Shown in pieces: positions 22,453 to 31,341 of a stretch of 64,000 nt of DNA. The stretch covers positions 186,001-250,000 of IMG/VR virus record IMGVR_UViG_3300044701_002789; one strand, written 5' to 3'. The notes below the pieces were generated by a model. That model had not been told where the DNA came from. It made no database searches and was given only the letters and a program-made list of their open reading frames with translations. Made by a program: the position numbers and the translations under genes. Position 1 is the first letter of the stretch; each line of letters begins with the position of its first letter.

Positions 22453-23934
22453 TCAGTCGGTGTCAAAGAAAAACATTTGCCATAGTCGTCCATTGTCCAT
22501 AACTGTCCCAAAGTATTGAGAAGCACTATGAATACAACTTGCATCAAAGATAACCAGACGATTATAAACATTTCCTAGAACATCAACAGGTTCAAATGGG
22601 GTTCCATCTAAATGACACCCTCCAGGAACATCAATCCACGCATCATTCCATCCTTCCTCATAATAAGTTCTTGCTTTTGTTTTCTTGTTAGCGTATAATG
22701 TGGTTCCACACTGATATGGTGCATTCGGTGTGAGGTACAACATACCACCCCACTTTTGATCGTCGCAATGATAAACTAAAGGTTCACCAGACCACGCAAC
22801 TTGAAATCTCCCATTCATCCCATGTTCTTCCCACTTTGTTATTTTTCTTCCCATGATTTCTTCAAATTTTTCTTTGAGTCCAGGAAATAAAAATTGTTGA
22901 TGAGTTCTTCTTCCAATGAATCCCCTACCCAAACCACCTTCAAGATAGTCTTGTTTTAATGCAAACTCTCTTACTTCATCTGGGTTCTCATAAAAGTTAT
23001 CTATAATCCAAGAAGTTGATTTGGAGTTAATATTAATATTAAATAGATTTTCTTGTTTAGGAAGCAAGAAATTTCTTACATTTGGCAAATTGAAGATAAT
23101 TTGTGGTAACAGATTAACTGGATAATTTTTTTGACTTAGTTTACTAGTTTGTTCTACTTCAATAATATCTTTCATAGATTCTGAACTTAAAGTATTAAGG
23201 TTGGAAAGATTATCGGATAAAACAGTAGTTTTTGCTTTATATTTTCTTAAAGTTTCATCTCCCATCCAAGTAAAATGCCACCCACAGTCTTCAATTATTT
23301 TTCCATTTTCAGTAATCCAAACCGGATCCAATGGACTACCATATTGTCCCCTGAATTTTGTCGGAGATCCTCCATTTGATAATTGTCTTTTAGTACACAA
23401 AAGAAGAGATTGACTCCAATCTGCCGGCACATCTCCCTCATAAAGTCTTTTATTCGCTTGACCTTCTAAAAGAACTAAAGGAACTTTAATGATATTGTTT
23501 GGAATATTTCTACAACATGTTGAAAAATATAGAATAAATTCTGGATTGATTATTTCATCACAATCACTTACGATAAAAACATCATCATCATCGTATTCAT
23601 CTATTACAGACATTAGAGCATCTCTTTGTAATCTTTCTCTAGTCCAATTTTTAACTTGAGTTGATTTTGCTTCTAATGAATAGACATAATCAGATTCATC
23701 TGGAATTAAATCTTCACTATCCGGCACAATAGTTTCAATAACCTGAATTTTATCCTTTGGTAAATTAAGATCTTCTATTAGTTTTTTACAAATAAAATCT
23801 TTATCATCTCCATTATGTGTTTTATTTGATTCAGAGATAATAAACTTATCCACATGATCTTTTAGTAGATTAATTCTAAGTTCTAATAATTCTTTTTCAA
23901 TGAAAAAAGTAAAATAATCAATAATCTTTTTCAT
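22453..23934 (-). CDS. GT17-like glycosyltransferase fused to a 2OG-Fe(II) oxygenase (DUF6445-like)
   Basis: ELLELRINLL, QRDAL, SDCDEI, GWHFTWMG; then IIDNFYENPD, HCD, YNRLVIFD..IHSA. Confidence 0.8.
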   Translation of the reverse strand: MKKIIDYFTFFIEKELLELRINLLKDHVDKFIISESNKTHNGDDKDFICKKLIEDLNLPKDKIQVIETIVPDSEDLIPDESDYVYSLEAKSTQVKNWTRERLQRDALMSVIDEYDDDDVFIVSDCDEIINPEFILYFSTCCRNIPNNIIKVPLVLLEGQANKRLYEGDVPADWSQSLLLCTKRQLSNGGSPTKFRGQYGSPLDPVWITENGKIIEDCGWHFTWMGDETLRKYKAKTTVLSDNLSNLNTLSSESMKDIIEVEQTSKLSQKNYPVNLLPQIIFNLPNVRNFLLPKQENLFNININSKSTSWIIDNFYENPDEVREFALKQDYLEGGLGRGFIGRRTHQQFLFPGLKEKFEEIMGRKITKWEEHGMNGRFQVAWSGEPLVYHCDDQKWGGMLYLTPNAPYQCGTTLYANKKTKARTYYEEGWNDAWIDVPGGCHLDGTPFEPVDVLGNVYNRLVIFDASCIHSASQYFGTVMDNGRLWQMFFFDTD

Positions 23935-24549
23935 TTAATACCACTCTGTAAATTTAATTCTATTTTCCGAAAATACTTTTTTGTAATTTTCTATTTTATT
24001 TCTATAAACAACTAAATCATCAAAAAAATGTGGATGAAATTCAATGTAAATTTCATTAATGTATTTAATTGTGCCAGATGATATTAATTTATCTATAATA
24101 TCAAATTCGCTTCCTTCAACATCTAATTTTACAACAATAAAATCATTAATACTAGAAAATGTTTCTATAATATTTGAAAAATCTAATACCCTTACTATCT
24201 CTGTTTCTGAATTATATTTAATTGGATTCTCTTGTAATTTTTGTGGGGGATTTAATAATATATTAGAAGACTGCCCAGTAAATGTACCAACTTCAGTTCC
24301 ATCCCAAATAGTAGATTCGGATAGGTTTAAATTTACATAATCATTTTTATTAGATACACCAGCATTAAAATGAATAATATTCAATCCATCATCTAATAAT
24401 TTTAAATAATTTTCTTTTGAACTAATATATGTTTTTGGATTTGGTTCAAAACAATAACATTCCCAACTAGAATCTATACCATAGATTTTAGATATTTCGT
24501 TGAACCCCTGAAACAAGTGTGTTCCGCAGTCAAAGAATTTTTTTTTTTT
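23935..24549 (-). CDS. FkbM-family methyltransferase domain, 5' end frameshifted at the A12 tract
   Basis: KFFDCGTHLFQG (motif I) upstream of the called TTG; YCFEPN, VKLDVEGSE; no in-frame ATG. Confidence 0.7.
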   Translation of the reverse strand, partial: KKKKFFDCGTHLFQGFNEISKIYGIDSSWECYCFEPNPKTYISSKENYLKLLDDGLNIIHFNAGVSNKNDYVNLNLSESTIWDGTEVGTFTGQSSNILLNPPQKLQENPIKYNSETEIVRVLDFSNIIETFSSINDFIVVKLDVEGSEFDIIDKLISSGTIKYINEIYIEFHPHFFDDLVVYRNKIENYKKVFSENRIKFTEWY

Positions 24550-25844
24550 AAATTTTTATTAGTACTCTGAATTTCATTATTAATATAAACCATAAATTCA
24601 CAATTATAAGTGTCAATAAAAGTATCATCAAATATTTTATCAGTTATGTCTAGTGATTTTCCCCAAGAAATATTTTGTCTGGTGCAAGACATTACCTTGT
24701 AATCGTTGAACTTAGTTAAATATGTATCTCTGAATTTTTTGAATTTTTCTCTGAAATTATAACCTTTGAGGTGAATTTCTATTGATATAAATTTAACATT
24801 ATTGAATATAAAATCTATATTTTCTTCGGTAAAAATATTATATTCACCACCTTCACAGTCAACTTTCATATAATCAATATGATTAATTGAATATGTTGAT
24901 ATAAGTTCTTTAAAAGTAATGGGAATAAAACTCTTATCATTCCCAAAAACATTAATTTCATCAGTATTATTACTTACTATTCCATTATTAATATAAGTTA
25001 TTGATGTATTAAAGTTATTGAATAATTTTTCGGAACAGTTTTTAACCAATGTTTTTAGTAAATTTTTAGATGGTTCAACACAATATACTTTTTTTGGTTT
25101 TTGATCTAAAATTGATATAGTATATGCACCAACACTTGCACCAATATCCAAAACAATATCATTTTCTTTTACATCTTTCCAAAATCTATAAACATTTTCA
25201 TGTATCACTTCTCTTTCTATTGTAACAATGTCTTCTTCCGTTAGGTCTGCCCAATCAAAGTTGTTTGGATAATTAAATGTTTGACCGATTGAATTTTTTC
25301 CTAATCTAATTAAGTTTTGATTTATACTATTTTTGTGTAATTCATCAAAATTATCCCAGTAATTTTTTGTAAGAAGATCAAATAGATTTCTACTTTCATC
25401 ACCTTTACCCCACCACCAAGCTGCAACTGCTTTTTGGAATAACAATAAATGTTTTCCACTATACTCAGGAATGTTAATACTTTCTATTTCATTATTATGA
25501 CATTGTAGACCAAGATTTGCATAGGTATAACAACTTTGCCATTCTTGGTTCTTTTCATACAATAGAGATAAGAAATAATATGCCTCTGGTCTTTGTGGCA
25601 ATAAGTTTAAGGCATTTTCTAATGTTACTTTTTCAGTATTATCTCTTGAACCTTGTAATTTATAACAAAACGCTGATTTTAGTAAACATTCATAAGCAAG
25701 TAAATCATTTTTAGATCTTTCCGCAGTTCTTAGATAATAAGTGTGTGCGGGTGCATACTGACCTTGTTTTTCATACCATTTCGCGAGATTATAATTATTT
25801 TCTGGATTTTCGGTATCTAGTGAAAATTTAATAAGCTCATTCAT
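24474..25844 (-). CDS. TPR + FkbM-family methyltransferase
   Basis: Helical repeats (NYNLAKWYE, PEAYYFLS); VLDIGASVG, YCVEPS, MKVDCEGGE. Confidence 0.8.
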   Translation of the reverse strand: MNELIKFSLDTENPENNYNLAKWYEKQGQYAPAHTYYLRTAERSKNDLLAYECLLKSAFCYKLQGSRDNTEKVTLENALNLLPQRPEAYYFLSLLYEKNQEWQSCYTYANLGLQCHNNEIESINIPEYSGKHLLLFQKAVAAWWWGKGDESRNLFDLLTKNYWDNFDELHKNSINQNLIRLGKNSIGQTFNYPNNFDWADLTEEDIVTIEREVIHENVYRFWKDVKENDIVLDIGASVGAYTISILDQKPKKVYCVEPSKNLLKTLVKNCSEKLFNNFNTSITYINNGIVSNNTDEINVFGNDKSFIPITFKELISTYSINHIDYMKVDCEGGEYNIFTEENIDFIFNNVKFISIEIHLKGYNFREKFKKFRDTYLTKFNDYKVMSCTRQNISWGKSLDITDKIFDDTFIDTYNCEFMVYINNEIQSTNKNLKKKNSLTAEHTCFRGSTKYLKSMV

Positions 25845-26814
25845 TAATAAAGTCCTCAACTACTGATTTTGAAATTCTGAGTATATACGCTGCGTTGTCT
25901 TGCGTTCCAAATGTAATTAGAAAATCATCATTATATTCGGCCATGCCACAAGAAAATTCAATTTTAAAATTTAAAAATGAAAATAACTTTGATACTTTTT
26001 GAAGTTTAAAATTCTTATCCCATATAACAAACCGATGACGATAAGTTGCATCTTTTCTACCTTGTTCTGAATTATAAAGTTCTGTTTCATGGAGAAGAGA
26101 AAGATATCCATTTTGATATGGAATAACTTGTGAACCACCTCTTAAATCATTTTTTAATTCTGTAGTGTAAGGACTTGTTTCAATTATTGTGGAATCTTTT
26201 CCTGTAATATCAAATTTCAATAATGCAGTTGGATTAGTCCATTTTAAAAGATGAAAAGGTTTATCTTCAATTGGAGTACAATTTTTCATACAATATTCAT
26301 CATCTGGTGGAGGACCTGGAATTCTATATCTAGAAACTTCTTTAACTTCAGAACCATTGAACCTCAATTCAGAAAGTTCCATTCTTCCAGTTCCAATAGT
26401 GTCTACATCTCTGCGTACACCTATAGCGTAAATCTTACCGTTCCATTGAATCAAACGAACATCTTCCAACCCAACAAATTCCCATTGTGGTTGATAAGTA
26501 TCAAAATTTGATGTATCTATTTTTGAGTAATGGAGTATATTTAAATCTTCATCTAATTCTGCAATATGATTTGCAGTTCTGAGGTGCATATCATTCTCTG
26601 GGTGTATGTAGGATAATGGTCCCCACATATGTTCAAATTTATTTAATTCCGAATGATATAATGTGTAATTTACATTTCTGATATTGACTAATATTCTTCC
26701 ATCAACTACTAAAACTGATGGATTTGTGAGAGAAGGTCCACAGAGATCTTCGGGATTTATGAGAAGTGGTTTAATAATGCCACCATTATCTAATGCAAGT
26801 TTTACAAAATTCAT
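25837..26814 (-). CDS. five-bladed propeller glycosidase/phosphorylase-like protein (GH130/GH43-like)
   Basis: TNPSV, GLEDVRL, KNCTP, LRGGSQ, YRHRFV, IEFSCG. Confidence 0.65.
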   Translation of the reverse strand: MNFVKLALDNGGIIKPLLINPEDLCGPSLTNPSVLVVDGRILVNIRNVNYTLYHSELNKFEHMWGPLSYIHPENDMHLRTANHIAELDEDLNILHYSKIDTSNFDTYQPQWEFVGLEDVRLIQWNGKIYAIGVRRDVDTIGTGRMELSELRFNGSEVKEVSRYRIPGPPPDDEYCMKNCTPIEDKPFHLLKWTNPTALLKFDITGKDSTIIETSPYTTELKNDLRGGSQVIPYQNGYLSLLHETELYNSEQGRKDATYRHRFVIWDKNFKLQKVSKLFSFLNFKIEFSCGMAEYNDDFLITFGTQDNAAYILRISKSVVEDFINE

Positions 26815-26838: not shown

Positions 26839-26845
26839 TATTTAT
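26839..26845 (-). promoter_or_regulatory. late promoter
   Basis: ATAAATA overlapping the upstream stop, 25 nt before the 26814 start. Confidence 0.65.
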
Positions 26846-27192
26846 TCTGGTTTAATGGGCCAAATAATTTCTCTAGGAAATTTTGATTGTTGAGGAATAT
26901 CTAAAAGTAATTGTCTATATTCAGTCCAATTGTCTTTTTCTTCTTGAGTAAAAGAATTCCAACGAATAACATTTATTGTATCAATGTAAATTGAAAGATA
27001 CTTATTTCTTCGGATTCTTTGTTTTTGGCACCATTCCTCATAGGTCATCCATCCATTTTCATTCCAAAACCATCCAATTTCTCCGTCGTTTTGTGGAGTA
27101 GAAATAAGTTCTTCTGTATCAGTCCAAGATTGGTCGTATAGAATATCTACACATTCTCTTGTATTCTTATTAATGACACATATTTTATTCAT
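26842..27192 (-). CDS. tail fibre assembly chaperone-like protein
   Basis: RIRRNKYL...W..YRQLLLDIPQQSKFP..IIWPIKP. Confidence 0.8.
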   Translation of the reverse strand: MNKICVINKNTRECVDILYDQSWTDTEELISTPQNDGEIGWFWNENGWMTYEEWCQKQRIRRNKYLSIYIDTINVIRWNSFTQEEKDNWTEYRQLLLDIPQQSKFPREIIWPIKPE

Positions 27193-27204
27193 TTATTTTA
27201 CTCC

Positions 27205-28659
27205 TTATAGTTTTAAATATTCTACTATTAAAATTGTACCCGCAGCTCCGGTTCCACCAACAACACCTGTAAGTAAATTTATATTTACTGCACCAGAACC
27301 TCCTGCACCGGGTTGTGTTGCGTTTATTCCAGCATTTGAACCTGCAGTAAATCTTACTGGTCCGTTTGCTCCGCCGCCCCAATATGATGCACCACCGTTC
27401 CCCGCAGTAACCGTATTGTTACCCACACCCAAACCGGGCAAACCATCGAGTCCAGTATGAAGAATGTCACCTCCAGTAGGAATTCCACCATTTCCACCAT
27501 TAAATGCCGATGTGTTGGCTGCATAAGCACTTCCAGTTCCAAATCCACCTTCTCCACCAGTTCCGACTAAAACAATGGAATCAATTCCAGTACAGGTAAA
27601 AATTGAGTTAGATCCATTTCCACCATTTCCGCCAAGAACAGTACCTGCAGCACCTCCACCTCCAACAGTATAGGTGGCGGTTGTCCCCAATTGTGCGGCA
27701 GTTAACCATTTAATTGATGTTCCTCCTCCTCCTCCGCCTCCAGAGCAACTACCAGATGAACCATCGGAGTCGGATCCTCCTCCTCCACCACCTCCACCAG
27801 TGACGAATACTTGAGCAATTATTGTTTTTGGATCTCTAGTAAAAGTTCCTGAACCTACTGAATTATATCTGGTTATTTTTACTGATGATATTCCTACGCT
27901 TCCATCTACTTCCACACTCCCATCCACTTTTACATTTCCAGCAACATGGAGTTTTGAATTTAATTGTGGATTCAATGTTCCTATACTAATAGAACCATCT
28001 AGAAATAAATTACTTGTACTCGGATTAAAACTGAATGGGGGTGATGTTGTTCTTATACTTGGCGTCTGATTTCCAGTTCCTGCAACAAACACTGGATAAA
28101 ATGTCGAATTGGTAGTAGTATCAAATGCTGAAATGACATTAGATGGTCCATTTAATCCTTGAATTCCTTGAGATCCTGTAGTTCCTTGAATTGATATTCC
28201 CTGAGTTCCTTGAATACCAAAATTACCTTGAATACCTTGAATTCCTTGAGATCCTGTAGTTCCTTGAATTGATATTCCCTGAGTTCCTTGAATACCAAAA
28301 TTACCTTGAATACCTTGAATTCCTTGAGATCCTGTAGTTCCTTGAATTGATATTCCCTGAGTTCCTTGAATACCAAAATTACCTTGAATACCTTGAATTC
28401 CTTGAGATCCTGTAGTTCCTTGACGACCTTGAATACCTTGAGTTCCTTGAGATCCTGTAGATCCTTGAGTACCTTGAATACCTTGAGTTCCTTGAGATCC
28501 TGTAGATCCTTGAGTACCTTGAATACCTTGAGTTCCTTGAGATCCTGTAGTTCCTTGACGACCTTGAATACCCTGAGTTCCTTGAGATCCTGTAGATCCT
28601 TGAATTCCCTGAGTGCCCCTAAAACTTGAATCTAAAAATGCGGAAAGATTTACTGGCAT
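27205..28659 (-). CDS. collagen-like fibre protein with Gly-rich C-terminal domain
   Basis: GTQ/GIQ/GSQ triplets; VGIGT-type fibre motif; poly-Gly loops. Confidence 0.85.
   Translation of the reverse strand: MPVNLSAFLDSSFRGTQGIQGSTGSQGTQGIQGRQGTTGSQGTQGIQGTQGSTGSQGTQGIQGTQGSTGSQGTQGIQGRQGTTGSQGIQGIQGNFGIQGTQGISIQGTTGSQGIQGIQGNFGIQGTQGISIQGTTGSQGIQGIQGNFGIQGTQGISIQGTTGSQGIQGLNGPSNVISAFDTTTNSTFYPVFVAGTGNQTPSIRTTSPPFSFNPSTSNLFLDGSISIGTLNPQLNSKLHVAGNVKVDGSVEVDGSVGISSVKITRYNSVGSGTFTRDPKTIIAQVFVTGGGGGGGGSDSDGSSGSCSGGGGGGGTSIKWLTAAQLGTTATYTVGGGGAAGTVLGGNGGNGSNSIFTCTGIDSIVLVGTGGEGGFGTGSAYAANTSAFNGGNGGIPTGGDILHTGLDGLPGLGVGNNTVTAGNGGASYWGGGANGPVRFTAGSNAGINATQPGAGGSGAVNINLLTGVVGGTGAAGTILIVEYLKL
28150..28620. 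repeat. 9-bp-period collagen-coding repeat with a 78-bp unit x3
   Basis: GSQGIQGIQGNFGIQGTQGISIQGTT repeated three times. Confidence 0.9.
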
Positions 28660-28744: not shown

Positions 28745-29100
28745 GTGTATATTTTTATTTCTTTATAAAGAGAATTATGTGTCTCGTTAATTTCTCTTTT
28801 TATTCTTGCTCTTTCATCATTAGTAATATAAACACCTCTCGCAAGTTCTATAAATTTCTCATCAAACACTTGAGATTTTTCCATCACTCTTAATTCATCT
28901 TCAATTTTCCAGAGTTTACGATTGATTGTAAGTAATTTTGAAACATAAGATGCATCATAAACCTTATGTTCTTGTGCAATTTGAATAAGTTCTTGAAGTT
29001 CCTTCTTTACATATTCATTAGAAGTGTGTTGTGACTTAATGGAAAGTATAGAAATTTTATCTAAAAGTTCACCGACTGATACTGGAATTTCAATTCTCAT
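28741..29100 (-). CDS. DUF6165-like protein
   Basis: IPVSVGELLDKISILSIK...NRKLWKIED...ARGVYITNDERARIKREIN. Confidence 0.8.
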   Translation of the reverse strand: MRIEIPVSVGELLDKISILSIKSQHTSNEYVKKELQELIQIAQEHKVYDASYVSKLLTINRKLWKIEDELRVMEKSQVFDEKFIELARGVYITNDERARIKREINETHNSLYKEIKIYT

Positions 29101-30646
29101 TTGTAGTATTATAAAGATTTAAAATTGCATCAGTTCTTTCTTTGAGATTTATTGTTTCTTGTGAAAATCCAGATGCAAATATAATGATATTTGGATTTTG
29201 TGTGAGTTTTCCAATGTTTAATAGATGAGTAAATGCCTTACCCATTAAATGACCACCAAGGTTCATTGCTTCACTTAATGCGTGAAATGCATAATTAGAT
29301 GCTCTTGAAATATCTTGAAGTTGTATGAGACAAATACTCGTCATAATAAACACATCAACTCTTGTCGGGTCAAAATAAGGTTTAGACATATTCAAATATT
29401 CTTGACCCAATTCAACTGCTTTTTGAATGTTTTGAACTTGATAATAATGTTTAAATATAAACCAGAGATAATAAATGTTTTGATACTGTTCATACTCTCT
29501 TTCACAAATTGAAAGATAGAATAATTCCTTATCTATTGTATTATGAATATTTTTTGTAATCTTAATTGTGGTATCTACTGCAACTTCATTTAGATAATCT
29601 TTTGTTGGAATAAACATTGGAGTTTCATGAACTGAATTCACCCAGGTATAATTCTTGGTTCGGTGAAAGCGAATATGTGAAGTTTGACCCAAGGTTGGTT
29701 CATTGTCTCCTTCTTTATCATATCGTTCGTGTCTAAATGCAGTGAATTCATTTGAGATTACTTCAAGACCTTCTGGAAAGAAATCATCTAAATCTTCATT
29801 AAAATCCAATGAAAATGCCCAGTCAGTTTTTACATAAGATAATGCTTGATTTCTTGCGATTGAGAAATCAAACTCTTCTCTGGTTTGTGAGTGTTGATGA
29901 ACTTCAATTCCCGCTTCTTGCAGTAGTTCTACTGTTTTATCAGTACTTCCGGTATCAACTACAACAGTGTGAGTGAATTTCTTTGAGTTCTCAATGAACT
30001 TTTGAATATTCTTTTCTTCGTTTTTGCAAATTGCATATAATGTAATTTCCATTTTATCTCCTTGTTTTTGATGTAACCAAACTTTACTTAATGTACAATC
30101 TCCACGATTAAGAAGAACTACAGATTTACCTGTAAAATATTCATTAACTGCTTGAATAACTCCATTCCAACTAATTACATAATCATCGCCGGTAATAAAA
30201 CCTCCCGGTTTGACCTTTGGATACCATGCAATAATGTCTGCAAGAACATTTTCATAATCGTGAGATGCATCAATATGAACAAAATCAAGACTATTATCTT
30301 CAAACTGTTTTGCTGCCTCAATACTTGTGGTTTGTAATGGTATTACATAATTACTTACACCACATTGTTCAAGATTATATTTAAATGCATCAAATAAAGT
30401 AAAATTCTGTGTCTTTAATCTATTTAATGCTTCTTTATGAGCATCTTCATCACTACCTTCCCAAGTATCTACTGCATAAAACTTGATGTTTTTATTTGAG
30501 TTCTTAATCTGTTCTCCCATATAACAAGTTGATTGCCCCATCCAAGAACCCACTTCTACGAAAGTTGAGTTATCTGGGCAGTATTTGATTGCTAAATCAT
30601 AAAGATTAGTATAAGAAAAATAACCCTCAATGTCTTTCCAATTCAT
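29090..30646 (-). CDS. class I SAM methyltransferase + GT2 glycosyltransferase + TPR fusion
   Basis: FVEVGSWMG, VHIDASHDY, PGGFITGDDY; YAICKNEEKNI, VVVDTGSTD, FSIARNQAL, SLDFNE. Confidence 0.85.
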   Translation of the reverse strand: MNWKDIEGYFSYTNLYDLAIKYCPDNSTFVEVGSWMGQSTCYMGEQIKNSNKNIKFYAVDTWEGSDEDAHKEALNRLKTQNFTLFDAFKYNLEQCGVSNYVIPLQTTSIEAAKQFEDNSLDFVHIDASHDYENVLADIIAWYPKVKPGGFITGDDYVISWNGVIQAVNEYFTGKSVVLLNRGDCTLSKVWLHQKQGDKMEITLYAICKNEEKNIQKFIENSKKFTHTVVVDTGSTDKTVELLQEAGIEVHQHSQTREEFDFSIARNQALSYVKTDWAFSLDFNEDLDDFFPEGLEVISNEFTAFRHERYDKEGDNEPTLGQTSHIRFHRTKNYTWVNSVHETPMFIPTKDYLNEVAVDTTIKITKNIHNTIDKELFYLSICEREYEQYQNIYYLWFIFKHYYQVQNIQKAVELGQEYLNMSKPYFDPTRVDVFIMTSICLIQLQDISRASNYAFHALSEAMNLGGHLMGKAFTHLLNIGKLTQNPNIIIFASGFSQETINLKERTDAILNLYNTTNEN

Positions 30647-31341
30647 AAGTATTTTTTCCAATCAATACAAGGTGATAAGAGGTCTGCTTCGCAATGTGTA
30701 GAATAACCAGGAATGGAAGATATTAATACTCTTCCATTTTGTGATAGTTCTATAAATTTTGAATGGTCTGTTGATGGTTCTACATCTGTTGAATGTTTGA
30801 TATGAGTATCAAAATCATTCATTAAAGTTGAATATTCAACCGCAAAAGTATTTGTAGTTGAAGGGGTCGCCATCCAATGAGATGAGTTGGTATGAAGAAC
30901 CTTGGTTCTAAAATCTCTGTAGAACTCCATGTATTTATCTCTATGGTCATATAGGGTTACATAATCTGCATAAAGTTCAAAACCCTCTAAAAGAATTTTA
31001 TCCCAACCTGGACGATGAATATAGTCATCTTCTAAAAAGTAAATGATTTCTCCTTTACGATGAACAGTATTTTTAACAAGATTTAGAGTTTCAATAAAAC
31101 TCTTTGCTTCTCCACCAGAGTTAATAATATGAACTTTTTCTTCTTGGGATAAAAAGGTGTCTTCAATCTTACCGTAATATTCATCATACACAATAGTGTA
31201 ATTGGTGGTTTCTGGATTTAAAGTGTTCTTAAAATTTTGAAAAACCTTTTCTTTACTCCACCACTTTGGTCTTTGTTTTCCGGGAGTTTCTTGTATTTTA
31301 GACTGATAACAGTGTCTTAAATAAACATTAATTTTTTTCAT
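30643..31341 (-). CDS. GT-A-like glycosyltransferase
   Basis: IIYFLEDDYIH (DxD-like), STTNTFA. Confidence 0.65.
   Translation of the reverse strand: MKKINVYLRHCYQSKIQETPGKQRPKWWSKEKVFQNFKNTLNPETTNYTIVYDEYYGKIEDTFLSQEEKVHIINSGGEAKSFIETLNLVKNTVHRKGEIIYFLEDDYIHRPGWDKILLEGFELYADYVTLYDHRDKYMEFYRDFRTKVLHTNSSHWMATPSTTNTFAVEYSTLMNDFDTHIKHSTDVEPSTDHSKFIELSQNGRVLISSIPGYSTHCEADLLSPCIDWKKYL

What the first reader, a model, noticed from the sequence alone, without database searches (positions are those of the whole stretch)
24474..24560. A12 homopolymer frameshift splits a tandem methyltransferase: possible slippage or phase-variation switch
Seen: 12 T's at 24538-24549 (A12 on the coding strand). The upstream TPR-FkbM ORF reads ...NLKKKN into a 20-aa tail. 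The -1 frame reads KKKKFFDCGTHLFQG, the SAM-binding motif I of the next FkbM domain, with a TAA just upstream and no ATG. With 13 (or 10) A's the two join into one TPR-MTase-MTase protein. Inference: polymerase slippage, a -1 ribosomal frameshift or phase variation toggling one methylation step. A sequencing or assembly error is equally possible.
Basis: partly seen in the sequence, partly recalled or inferred. Interest (0 to 1): 0.6.

Follow-up and report, generated by a model that had tools for sequence, protein, structure and literature searches.

The report
Poly-A frameshift splits cyanophage methyltransferase fusion
In an uncultured freshwater cyanophage, a run of 12 A's (the only long single-base run in its 258-kb genome) puts the second methyltransferase domain of a normally fused sugar-modifying enzyme out of frame, so that domain can be made only when a polymerase or ribosome slips; this is a known kind of leaky switch, and nothing here shows that selection keeps it.

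Summary
A12 lies on the coding (-) strand at 24538-24549. The zero frame gives a 456-aa TPR-FkbM protein with a 20-aa junk tail. The -1 frame carries an intact FkbM domain (MT2) with no usable start codon.

The tract is very likely real. Three IMG/VR assemblies and Logan contigs of four runs (two samples, 56-82x) all carry A12. They are one clone, so they test reproducibility, not conservation.

The fusion is native. The closest diverged relative (L013, 68% identity over the full length) encodes TPR-MT1-MT2 as one 638-aa ORF, with an in-frame A9GA3 Lys4 linker at the same place. Ten other relatives carry MT2 as a stand-alone gene starting MKK[IV]FFDCG. None needs a frameshift.

The window's MT2 keeps all 18 invariant family residues. 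Four of them lie upstream of the only candidate start codon (TTG).

No RNA structure that could stimulate ribosomal frameshifting was found. This is the only homopolymer of 9 or more in 258 kb.

Best reading: a real one-base-short hypermutable tract, in effect a contingency locus caught in its off or leaky state. Full-length protein would come only from transcriptional or ribosomal slippage, or from replication slippage to A13 or A10. Selected ("programmed") recoding is not supported by conservation. Minority tract lengths in reads could not be measured.

The parts
24538..24549 (-). A12 homopolymer (T12 on the + strand). It is the slippery, hypermutable tract in the Lys-rich linker between the MT1 and MT2 domains.
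   Evidence: It is the only homopolymer of 9 or more in 258 kb. It is identical in three assemblies and in four Logan contig sets.
24474..25844 (-). Zero-frame ORF as written in the DNA: TPR head plus FkbM methyltransferase 1 (MT1), 456 aa from the ATG at 25844. The ORF listing extends it to the TTG at 25859, giving 461 aa.
   Evidence: (PF05050 at 36.5 bits, plus weak TPR hits). The ATG overlaps the stop of the upstream gene (ATGAATGA).
24474..24537 (-). Out-of-frame tail of 20 aa after the tract (SLTAEHTCFRGSTKYLKSMV) plus the TAG stop. This is MT2 coding sequence read in the wrong frame.
23935..24555 (-). Open -1 frame encoding FkbM methyltransferase 2 (MT2): K F KKKK FFDCGTHLFQG ... EWY, then the stop. 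It has no start codon before the TTG at 24516.
   Evidence: PF05050 at 44.8 bits, profile positions 1-161 beginning at residue 7. (all 18 invariant residues kept). (pLDDT 91.9, strand beta1 at residues 3-8). (best PDB match 2py6, an FkbM).
24556..24561 (-). Two consecutive TAA codons that close the MT2 frame just upstream of the tract.
   Evidence: Read directly.
24514..24516 (-). TTG, the only candidate start codon in the MT2 frame. Starting here would delete invariant residues F5, D7, G9 and H11, that is strand beta1 and the glycine loop.
22453..23934 (-). Next gene, abutting the MT2 stop: a fusion of a GT17-like glycosyltransferase and DUF6445.
   Evidence: It is syntenic in L013.
25837..26814 (-). 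Upstream gene of the cluster, 325 aa. Its homologues are annotated 'MGP protein' or 'beta-mannosyltransferase' in Synechococcus phages. It has no Pfam or PHROG hit here.
   Evidence: It is syntenic in L013.
26842..28659 (-). Tail-fibre-assembly-like gene (26842-27192) and collagen-like, glycine-rich tail-fibre gene (27205-28659). These are structural neighbours and possible substrates of the glycan-modifying cluster.

Best explanation
The A12 tract is a real feature of the DNA of one clonal freshwater T4-like cyanophage. It lies in the lysine-rich linker of a protein that is natively a single chain: TPR, then FkbM-MT1, then FkbM-MT2. The tract is one base short of the in-frame A13 (L-KKKK-F).

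The most likely origin is an interrupted A-rich Lys4 linker like the A9GA3 of the nearest relative. That linker became a pure A-run and then lost one A by replication slippage.

Standard decoding therefore gives a 456-aa TPR-MT1 protein with a 20-aa junk tail. The intact MT2 domain is made only in three cases:
(a) RNA polymerase adds one A (or drops two) on the tract;
(b) ribosomes slide or shift by -1 on the A-run;
(c) DNA replication slips back to A13 or A10 in part of the progeny.

The tract thus acts as a leaky, reversible off switch or attenuator, like a contingency locus, for one methylation step. That step belongs to a glycan-modifying gene cluster next to the tail-fibre genes.

Shown: the tract, the frames, the intact MT2, the fused orthologue and the reproducibility of A12. 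Inferred: the slippage itself and its efficiency (by analogy, of the order of 10-25% of transcripts), the substrate, and any selective value.
For: - Tract and frames.
- A12 is reproduced in three IMG/VR assemblies. Logan contigs of four runs (two samples, two studies) span it with 0 gaps at word depth 56-82.
- The fusion is native. L013/L056 has one 638-aa ORF with the junction GTA AAA AAA AAG AAA GTA. The in-silico A13 product aligns to it end to end at 68% identity. MT2-type domains also occur as C-terminal fusion domains in L055 and L007.
- MT2 is undecayed. Its frame runs 206 codons without a stop through DNA of 26% GC. All 18 invariant and 10 near-invariant family residues are present. 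The fold is confident (pLDDT 91.9), and strand beta1 starts within the tract-encoded lysines.
- Independent initiation is implausible. Two TAA codons close the frame upstream. The only start candidate, a TTG, lies after invariant residues F5, D7, G9 and H11.
- The tract is exceptional: the only homopolymer of 9 or more in 258 kb and longer than any in 518 kb of relatives.
- Precedents:
  - An A11 tract in C. rodentium tssM1 gives 20-25% transcriptional frameshifting (PMC4256274).
  - RNA polymerase slips on runs of 9 A/T (PMC5009743).
  - Ribosomes slide robustly from A11 (PMC4363877).
  - An A9 tract in the T2 agt gene is a reversible contingency locus (bioRxiv 10.1101/2025.10.21.683753).
Against: - No reads could be laid, only contigs, so neither the true modal tract length in reads nor minority lengths were seen.
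- No RNA data were found.
- The three assemblies are one clone. There are no differences over 258 kb outside a collagen-like repeat. They are therefore not independent evolutionary samples.
- None of the 13 nearest loci needs a frameshift, so nothing shows that selection maintains the tract.
- MT2 is the most diverged module compared with L013 (53% identity against 83% for MT1). That would also fit relaxed constraint.
- Slippage by cyanobacterial RNA polymerase or ribosomes on A12 has not been measured.
Confidence: 0.6

Rival explanations
1. Consensus or assembly artefact. The phage really carries A13 (or A10) and a continuous 636-aa gene, and the length of the long A-run was undercalled systematically.
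For: - A13 restores a fusion collinear with L013.
- Long mononucleotide runs are the classic site of library PCR stutter, with a bias towards deletions (general knowledge).
- All holders of the sequence may derive from the same few samples.
Against: - Three assemblies and four Logan contig sets built independently from the reads all give A12 at 56-82x. No gap and no alternative contig was reported.
- The two 258-kb assemblies show no indel at any other homopolymer.
- Stutter normally leaves the true length as the mode.
Confidence: 0.12
2. Selected, programmed recoding. The A12 is kept by selection so that transcriptional slippage (or a -1 ribosomal shift) yields a set ratio of short (TPR-MT1) and long (TPR-MT1-MT2) isoforms, as in C. 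rodentium tssM1 or Thermus dnaX.
For: - This is the only long homopolymer in a genome that otherwise lacks runs of 9 or more.
- It sits exactly at a domain boundary, and MT2 is intact.
- The relative L013 carries an in-frame A9 at the same junction. That tract could give the inverse ratio, as with tssM1 versus tssM3 (PMC4256274).
Against: - The frameshift-requiring layout is seen in one clone only. None of the 13 closest loci has it: ten have a stand-alone MT2 with its own ATG and two are in-frame fusions.
- No stimulatory RNA structure or Shine-Dalgarno-like element was found.
- There is no expression data.
Confidence: 0.12
3. Plain fresh pseudogenisation. MT2 has just been lost by a slippage mutation in a clonal bloom, and any read-through is noise without biological effect.
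For: - It is a single clonal lineage.
- MT2 is an accessory, swappable module. It is absent from many relatives and from all 50,697 isolate phage records.
- MT2 is the most diverged module compared with L013.
Against: - MT2 shows no second lesion and keeps all conserved residues.
- By published precedent, an A12 tract cannot be silent at the RNA or ribosome level (PMC4256274, PMC4363877).
- At such a tract, reversion by replication slippage should be frequent (bioRxiv 10.1101/2025.10.21.683753).
Confidence: 0.13
4. MT2 is translated on its own, by initiation at the TTG at 24516 or by re-initiation after the upstream stop, as a separate gene like the stand-alone MT2 genes of relatives.
For: - Ten of the 13 relatives have a stand-alone MT2. 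In L057 it overlaps the end of the upstream TPR-MT1 ORF.
- The TTG at 24516 lies 40 nt upstream of the zero-frame stop codon at 24474-24476.
Against: - Every stand-alone relative starts at ATG-AAA-AAA, upstream of FFDCG. The window has TAA TAA and no start codon there.
- A TTG start would delete strand beta1 and the Gly loop, including four invariant residues.
Confidence: 0.03

Closest known systems
Citrobacter rodentium tssM1 (A11) and Yersinia pseudotuberculosis tssM3: transcriptional frameshifting on a poly-A run (PMC4256274)
   Same: - An uninterrupted A-run of 11 or more inside a multidomain gene.
- The C-terminal domain sits in another frame.
- The stop codon comes shortly after the tract in the zero frame.
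- Orthologues have a single ORF.
- No stimulatory structure is needed.
- The result is a short and a long isoform.
   Different: - There, mRNA heterogeneity, both proteins and a functional need for the ratio were demonstrated. Here nothing is measured.
- The host is a cyanobacterium and the gene belongs to a phage.
- The state is seen in one clone only.
Phage contingency loci in T2 and T4, for example the A9 tract in the glucosyltransferase gene agt (bioRxiv 10.1101/2025.10.21.683753)
   Same: - A T4-like phage.
- A mononucleotide A-run inside a gene for a sugar-modifying enzyme.
- Reversible +/-1 frameshifts by DNA polymerase slippage create mixed progeny.
   Different: - In T2 the reference state is ON and variants are rare (about 1e-4 to 1e-3 of reads). 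Here the consensus state is OFF and the tract is longer (12).
- Length variation could not be examined here.
Thermus thermophilus dnaX (slippage on a 9-base A/T run) and IS-element transposases made by transcriptional realignment (PMC5009743)
   Same: A homopolymer-driven, structure-independent change of frame that yields two products sharing an N-terminus.
   Different: Those sites are conserved among relatives and are clearly selected. This one is not conserved.
Rescue of poly(A) frameshift mutations by polymerase infidelity in the endosymbionts Buchnera and Blochmannia (cited in PMC5009743)
   Same: An accidental indel in a long A-run of an AT-rich genome, tolerated because slippage restores some in-frame product.
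   Different: Endosymbionts have many such tracts as a result of drift. This phage genome has exactly one and otherwise avoids runs of 9 or more.
FkbM-family SAM-dependent methyltransferases (Pfam PF05050; PDB 2py6)
   Same: Both halves pass the Pfam threshold. The MT2 model's only significant PDB match is the FkbM protein 2py6.
   Different: - The relation is very distant (13% identity to 2py6, TM 0.49).
- A profile of MT2 and its relatives finds no sequence match among PDB chains.
- The substrate is unknown.
- The domains are fused to a TPR head and lie in tandem.

Membership tests
FkbM-family methyltransferase (PF05050): MT2 and MT1 | Profile match above Pfam's gathering score | tested here: met
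   MT2 scores 44.8 bits and MT1 36.5 bits against a cut-off of 22.7.
FkbM-family methyltransferase (PF05050): MT2 and MT1 | Rossmann-like methyltransferase fold with an N-terminal strand beta1 and glycine loop (motif I) | tested here: met
   pLDDT 91.9, strand beta1 at residues 3-8 and the loop G9-H11; the only significant PDB match is 2py6, an FkbM (E 1.5e-4, probability 1.00). MT1 was not folded.
FkbM-family methyltransferase (PF05050): MT2 and MT1 | SAM-dependent methyl transfer to a defined, probably sugar, acceptor | not testable with these tools
   Needs a biochemical assay.
Productive transcriptional slippage site (tssM1 or Thermus dnaX type) | Uninterrupted A or T run of 9 or more in the coding strand or template | tested here: met
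   A12.
Productive transcriptional slippage site (tssM1 or Thermus dnaX type) | The alternative frame encodes a domain that is contiguous with the upstream part in orthologues | tested here: met
   L013 carries the single 638-aa ORF.
Productive transcriptional slippage site (tssM1 or Thermus dnaX type) | The frameshift-requiring arrangement is conserved in diverged relatives | tested here: not met
   none of the 13 nearest loci has it. The three contigs that do are one clone.
Productive transcriptional slippage site (tssM1 or Thermus dnaX type) | Heterogeneous mRNA tract lengths and two protein products | not testable with these tools
   One search found no RNA run holding the stretch. Only contigs were laid.
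Programmed -1 ribosomal frameshift | Slippery heptamer X XXY YYZ in the zero frame | tested here: met
   A AAA AAA occurs several times within TTA AAA AAA AAA AAT.
Programmed -1 ribosomal frameshift | A stimulatory element: a downstream stem-loop or pseudoknot at 5-9 nt, or an upstream Shine-Dalgarno-like sequence | tested here: not met
   downstream z -0.28, with only a weak 6-bp hairpin inside conserved coding sequence; upstream z +0.53. No AGGAGG-like sequence is seen.
Contingency locus (phase variation by simple-sequence repeat) | A repeat within an ORF whose +/-1 changes switch the product on and off | tested here: met
   A10 and A13 are ON (635 and 636 aa). A11, A12 and A14 are OFF (437, 456 and 438 aa).
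Contingency locus (phase variation by simple-sequence repeat) | Observed length polymorphism within or between populations | tested here: inconclusive
   All three assemblies and four Logan contig sets show A12. Contigs drop rare variants and raw reads were not available.
Contingency locus (phase variation by simple-sequence repeat) | The gene affects a surface or interaction phenotype | not testable with these tools
   Context only: the cluster of GT17, DUF6445, FkbM and mannosyltransferase-like genes lies beside collagen-like tail-fibre genes.

The most novel reading that the evidence does not exclude
Selection keeps the A12 as a switch or recoding site. Through it, a T4-like cyanophage would produce progeny, or isoform mixtures, with and without one sugar O-methylation on a glycan made by the gene cluster beside the tail fibres. 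That glycan might sit on the collagen-like fibre itself. The result would be diversified host recognition or evasion of host defences. It would be a bet-hedging contingency locus in an environmental phage, caught in its OFF state.
Probability: 0.15. Interest if true: 0.7.

Novelty: new member of a known kind. Interest (0 to 1): 0.35.

Why it matters
If real and functional, this would be a natural example, from an uncultured freshwater cyanophage, of a homopolymer switch or slippage site controlling a glycan-methylating domain next to the tail-fibre genes. Contingency loci in phages have so far been argued only for laboratory coliphages and vibriophages (2025 preprint).

It also matters for annotation. 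Gene callers will report a 461-aa ORF and a truncated 193-aa MT2 ORF starting at TTG, whereas the biological unit is a 636-aa three-domain protein.

The wider family may be the more general point. It has a conserved TPR head fused to interchangeable enzyme modules: FkbM, FkbM-FkbM, radical SAM, DUF6445 and GT17. In some relatives MT2 is instead a separate gene. These phages shuffle glycan-tailoring modules freely, and the junctions are A-rich lysine linkers that are inherently prone to slippage.

Tried and rejected
- **tblastn of MT2 against 50,697 isolate phage records:** no match. MT2 relatives had to be taken from IMG/VR and metagenome contigs instead.
- **RNA folding around the tract:** 108 nt downstream and 91 nt upstream fold no better than shuffled sequence. 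Classical stimulated -1 PRF was therefore set aside.
- **A stand-alone MT2 gene:** rejected. The frame is closed by TAA TAA and has no start codon upstream of the motif. The TTG at 24516 would remove invariant residues.
- **A recent tandem duplication as the origin of the two methyltransferase domains:** rejected. MT1 and MT2 share only motif-level similarity (best BLASTP segment 12/30, E 0.004).
- **Using the three IMG/VR contigs as evolutionary replicates:** rejected. G001 is 100% identical to G000, and G002 differs only within one collagen-like repeat.
- **Read-level tract lengths:** not obtainable. All four holder runs are kept as Logan contigs, and no RNA holder was found.
- **Profile search of MT2 against PDB sequences:** no hit. 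The fold search was needed to reach 2py6.
- **Large protein searches:** The search for homologous proteins and the search of protein representatives were not used. The locus scans had already answered the architecture question.
no other genetic code was invoked. Read laying was given 2,001 letters.
Full report
**What the window is.** The window is bases 186,001-250,000 of a 258,362-bp IMG/VR virus contig with terminal repeats, taken from a freshwater metagenome. Its nearest cultured relatives are T4-like cyanomyoviruses of Synechococcus: S-SRM01, S-CRM01, DSL-LC02 (Kyanoviridae) and S-SCSM2R. Genes around the finding lie on the - strand.

**The observation.**
- On the coding strand the sequence reads ...ACT AAT AAA AAT TTA AAA AAA AAA AAT TCT TTG ACT..., with exactly 12 A's at 24549-24538.
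- From the ATG at 25844, the zero frame gives a 456-aa protein with a weakly scoring TPR head and an FkbM domain (PF05050, 36.5 bits). It ends ...NLKKKN, then 20 unrelated residues, then TAG at 24474-24476.
- The -1 frame reads TAA TAA AAA TTT (AAA)x4 TTC TTT GAC TGC GGA..., that is **KF-KKKK-FFDCGTHLFQG. It stays open for 206 codons to the stop at 23935-23937.
- The Pfam FkbM profile matches this frame from profile position 1 at residue 7 (44.8 bits).
- The only start-type codon in this frame is the TTG at 24516, downstream of FFDCGTH.
- In silico, A13 gives a 636-aa product and A10 a 635-aa product, both the full fusion. A11 gives 437 aa and A14 438 aa; both stop after two residues, at the TGA inside TTCTTTGA.

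**Is it more than chance?**
- The tract is the only homopolymer of 9 or more in the whole genome. There are 14 runs of A8/T8 and none of 9, 10 or 11.
- Fifth-order Markov simulations of the genome expect about 12 runs of 9 or more and 0.43 of 12 or more.
- In about 518 kb of related loci, some of them redundant, no run exceeds 9.
- The genome avoids slippery runs, and this one is a clear outlier.

**Is it an assembly error?**
- Two further IMG/VR contigs from other metagenomes carry the same A12.
- Logan's own contigs from four runs (two samples, two studies) cross the tract with 0 mismatches and 0 gaps, at word depths of 56-82.
- The limit of this evidence is that the three contigs are one clone. 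G001 is 100% identical to G000 over 224,510 bp. G002 differs from G000 only inside a repeat with a 9-bp period in the collagen-like tail-fibre gene.
- This supports the accuracy of the consensus: no other homopolymer differs anywhere in 258 kb. It says nothing about evolutionary maintenance.
- Raw reads were not available, so minority tract lengths are unknown. I put the artefact explanation at about 12%.

**What the gene should look like.**
- The closest diverged relative is L013, the same contig as L056 (13-kb contigs). Its identity to the window is 67% in the TPR head, 83% in MT1 and 53% in MT2, and the flanking genes are the same.
- L013 encodes TPR-MT1-MT2 as one 638-aa ORF. Its junction is ...NSSV-KKKK-VFIDAGTHLFQG, written GTA AAA AAA AAG AAA GTA.
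- The in-silico A13 product of the window aligns with it end to end at 68% identity.
- A single G-to-A change in such an A9GA3 linker would create A13. Loss of one A would then give the window's A12.
- The metagenome scan shows how changeable this junction is:
  - In ten of the 13 nearest MT2 loci, MT2 is a stand-alone gene of about 200 aa beginning ATG AAA AAA (ATA/GTA) TTC TTT GAT, that is MKK[IV]FFDCGTH.
  - In L057, that gene overlaps the end of an 838-aa GT17-TPR-MT1 ORF.
  - In L055, MT2 is fused directly to the TPR head.
  - In L007, an MT2-like domain forms the C-terminus of a 466-aa fusion.
- Other relatives join the same TPR head to different modules:
  - a second MT1-like domain in L016;
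  - a radical-SAM-like module in DSL-LC02 (assigned by eye from its Cys-rich sequence);
  - DUF6445 in L021 and S-SCSM2R.
- None of these loci needs a frameshift.

**State of MT2 in the window.**
- In an alignment of 12 sequences, the window copy keeps all 18 invariant and all 10 near-invariant positions.
- AlphaFold gives pLDDT 91.9 and pTM 0.89. Strand beta1 lies at residues 3-8 (KKFFDC), so the fold begins inside the lysines encoded by the tract.
- The only significant PDB match is the FkbM protein 2py6.
- Starting at the TTG would delete F5, D7, G9 and H11. MT2 therefore looks functional but cannot be reached by normal initiation.
- MT1 and MT2 are distant paralogues, not a recent duplication.

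**Mechanism.**
- No stimulatory RNA structure was found. Downstream z is -0.28 and upstream z is +0.53. No Shine-Dalgarno-like element is visible. Classical programmed -1 frameshifting is therefore unsupported.
- A12 needs no such help. Bacterial RNA polymerases slip efficiently on runs of 9 A/T (PMC5009743).
- An A11 run in C. rodentium tssM1 gives 20-25% frame-restored product, and both isoforms are used there (PMC4256274).
- E. coli ribosomes slide robustly from A11 upward (PMC4363877).
- At the DNA level, an A9 run in the T2 agt gene reverts about 1000-fold faster than a point mutation. The authors of that preprint propose it as a phage contingency locus (bioRxiv 10.1101/2025.10.21.683753).
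- By inference, the window's gene yields mainly the 456-aa TPR-MT1 protein, plus a minority of the 636-aa fusion. Progeny should include A13 and A11 variants.

**Likely role (inferred).** The cluster lies directly downstream of two structural genes: a collagen-like, glycine-rich tail fibre and a tail-fibre-assembly-like gene. The cluster itself consists of:
- a mannosyltransferase-like gene;
- the TPR-MT1-MT2 gene;
- the GT17-DUF6445 gene;
- a further gene at 29090-30661 that matches glycosyltransferase and methyltransferase PHROG families.

FkbM-type enzymes are typically O-methyltransferases of sugars or polyketide hydroxyls (my own knowledge). The tract probably sets the dose of one methylation step on a glycan, possibly on the virion. 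No substrate evidence exists.

**Verdict.** The sequence observation is confirmed, and the tract very probably exists in the DNA. The native architecture is a fusion. The best explanation is a hypermutable tract one base short of in frame, with leaky rescue by slippage: a contingency-like locus seen in its OFF state (0.6). The rivals are:
- consensus artefact (0.12);
- selected programmed recoding (0.12);
- plain fresh pseudogene (0.13);
- independent initiation (0.03).

This is a new member of a known kind and of moderate interest.

**Procedural notes.** Read laying was given 2,001 letters. No alternative genetic code was used.

Noticed in passing
window ~28150-28513 (genome 214,150-214,513), inside the collagen-like tail-fibre gene 27205-28659 (-): The only difference between the two 258-kb assemblies (G000 and G002) is a 78-bp length and phase difference in a repeat with a 9-bp period (Gly-X-Y coding). 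It is either a real length polymorphism of the fibre or an assembly ambiguity in the repeat.
   Followed up: partly
whole genome G000 (258,362 bp): Homopolymers of 9 or more are strongly depleted. There are 14 runs of A8/T8, none of 9-11 and the single A12. A 5th-order Markov model expects about 12 runs of 9 or more. This suggests selection against slippery runs in this phage.
   Followed up: partly
L013:2363-2371 (the same site in L056): The longest homopolymer in the nearest relative's locus is an in-frame A9 at the orthologous MT1/MT2 junction. At that length RNA polymerase slippage is documented, so the relative might make a minority of truncated TPR-MT1 protein, the inverse ratio to the window.
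   Followed up: no
L002 (S-SCSM2R), L003 (DSL-LC02), L016, L021, L046, L055, L057: A conserved TPR 'head' is fused to interchangeable enzyme modules across cyanophage-like contigs: FkbM, FkbM-FkbM, a radical-SAM-like module, DUF6445 and GT17. In some relatives MT2 is a separate gene rather than a fused domain. Two GenBank names look misleading: 'cytochrome c-type biogenesis protein CcmH/NrfG' (XQU50108.1), and 'FkbM family methyltransferase' for WJZ48258.1, which by eye is DUF6445-like.
   Followed up: partly
window 24001-26000: GC falls to 26% here against about 35% for the window, across the TPR-MT1-MT2 gene. This fits an accessory module that was acquired or is rich in Lys and Asn.
   Followed up: no
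window 22453-23934 (-) and 29090-30661 (-): Two more bifunctional fusions lie in the same cluster. One joins a GT17-like glycosyltransferase to DUF6445; PHROGs labels the DUF6445 part 'minor coat protein'. The other matches a methyltransferase PHROG family and a beta-1,4-glycosyltransferase family.
   Followed up: no
IMG/VR contigs 3300047510_002187 (G001) and 3300043427_002327 (G002): G001 (224,510 bp, called 'linear' and 100% complete) is an exact reverse-complement sub-sequence of G000. G002 is 99.99% identical to G000. The same phage clone was therefore recovered from at least three metagenomes.
   Followed up: yes
window 23935-24549 (-): This MT2 type of FkbM domain has no tblastn match at E <= 1e-5 in 50,697 isolate phage records. 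It is common in freshwater and marine metagenome contigs.
   Followed up: partly
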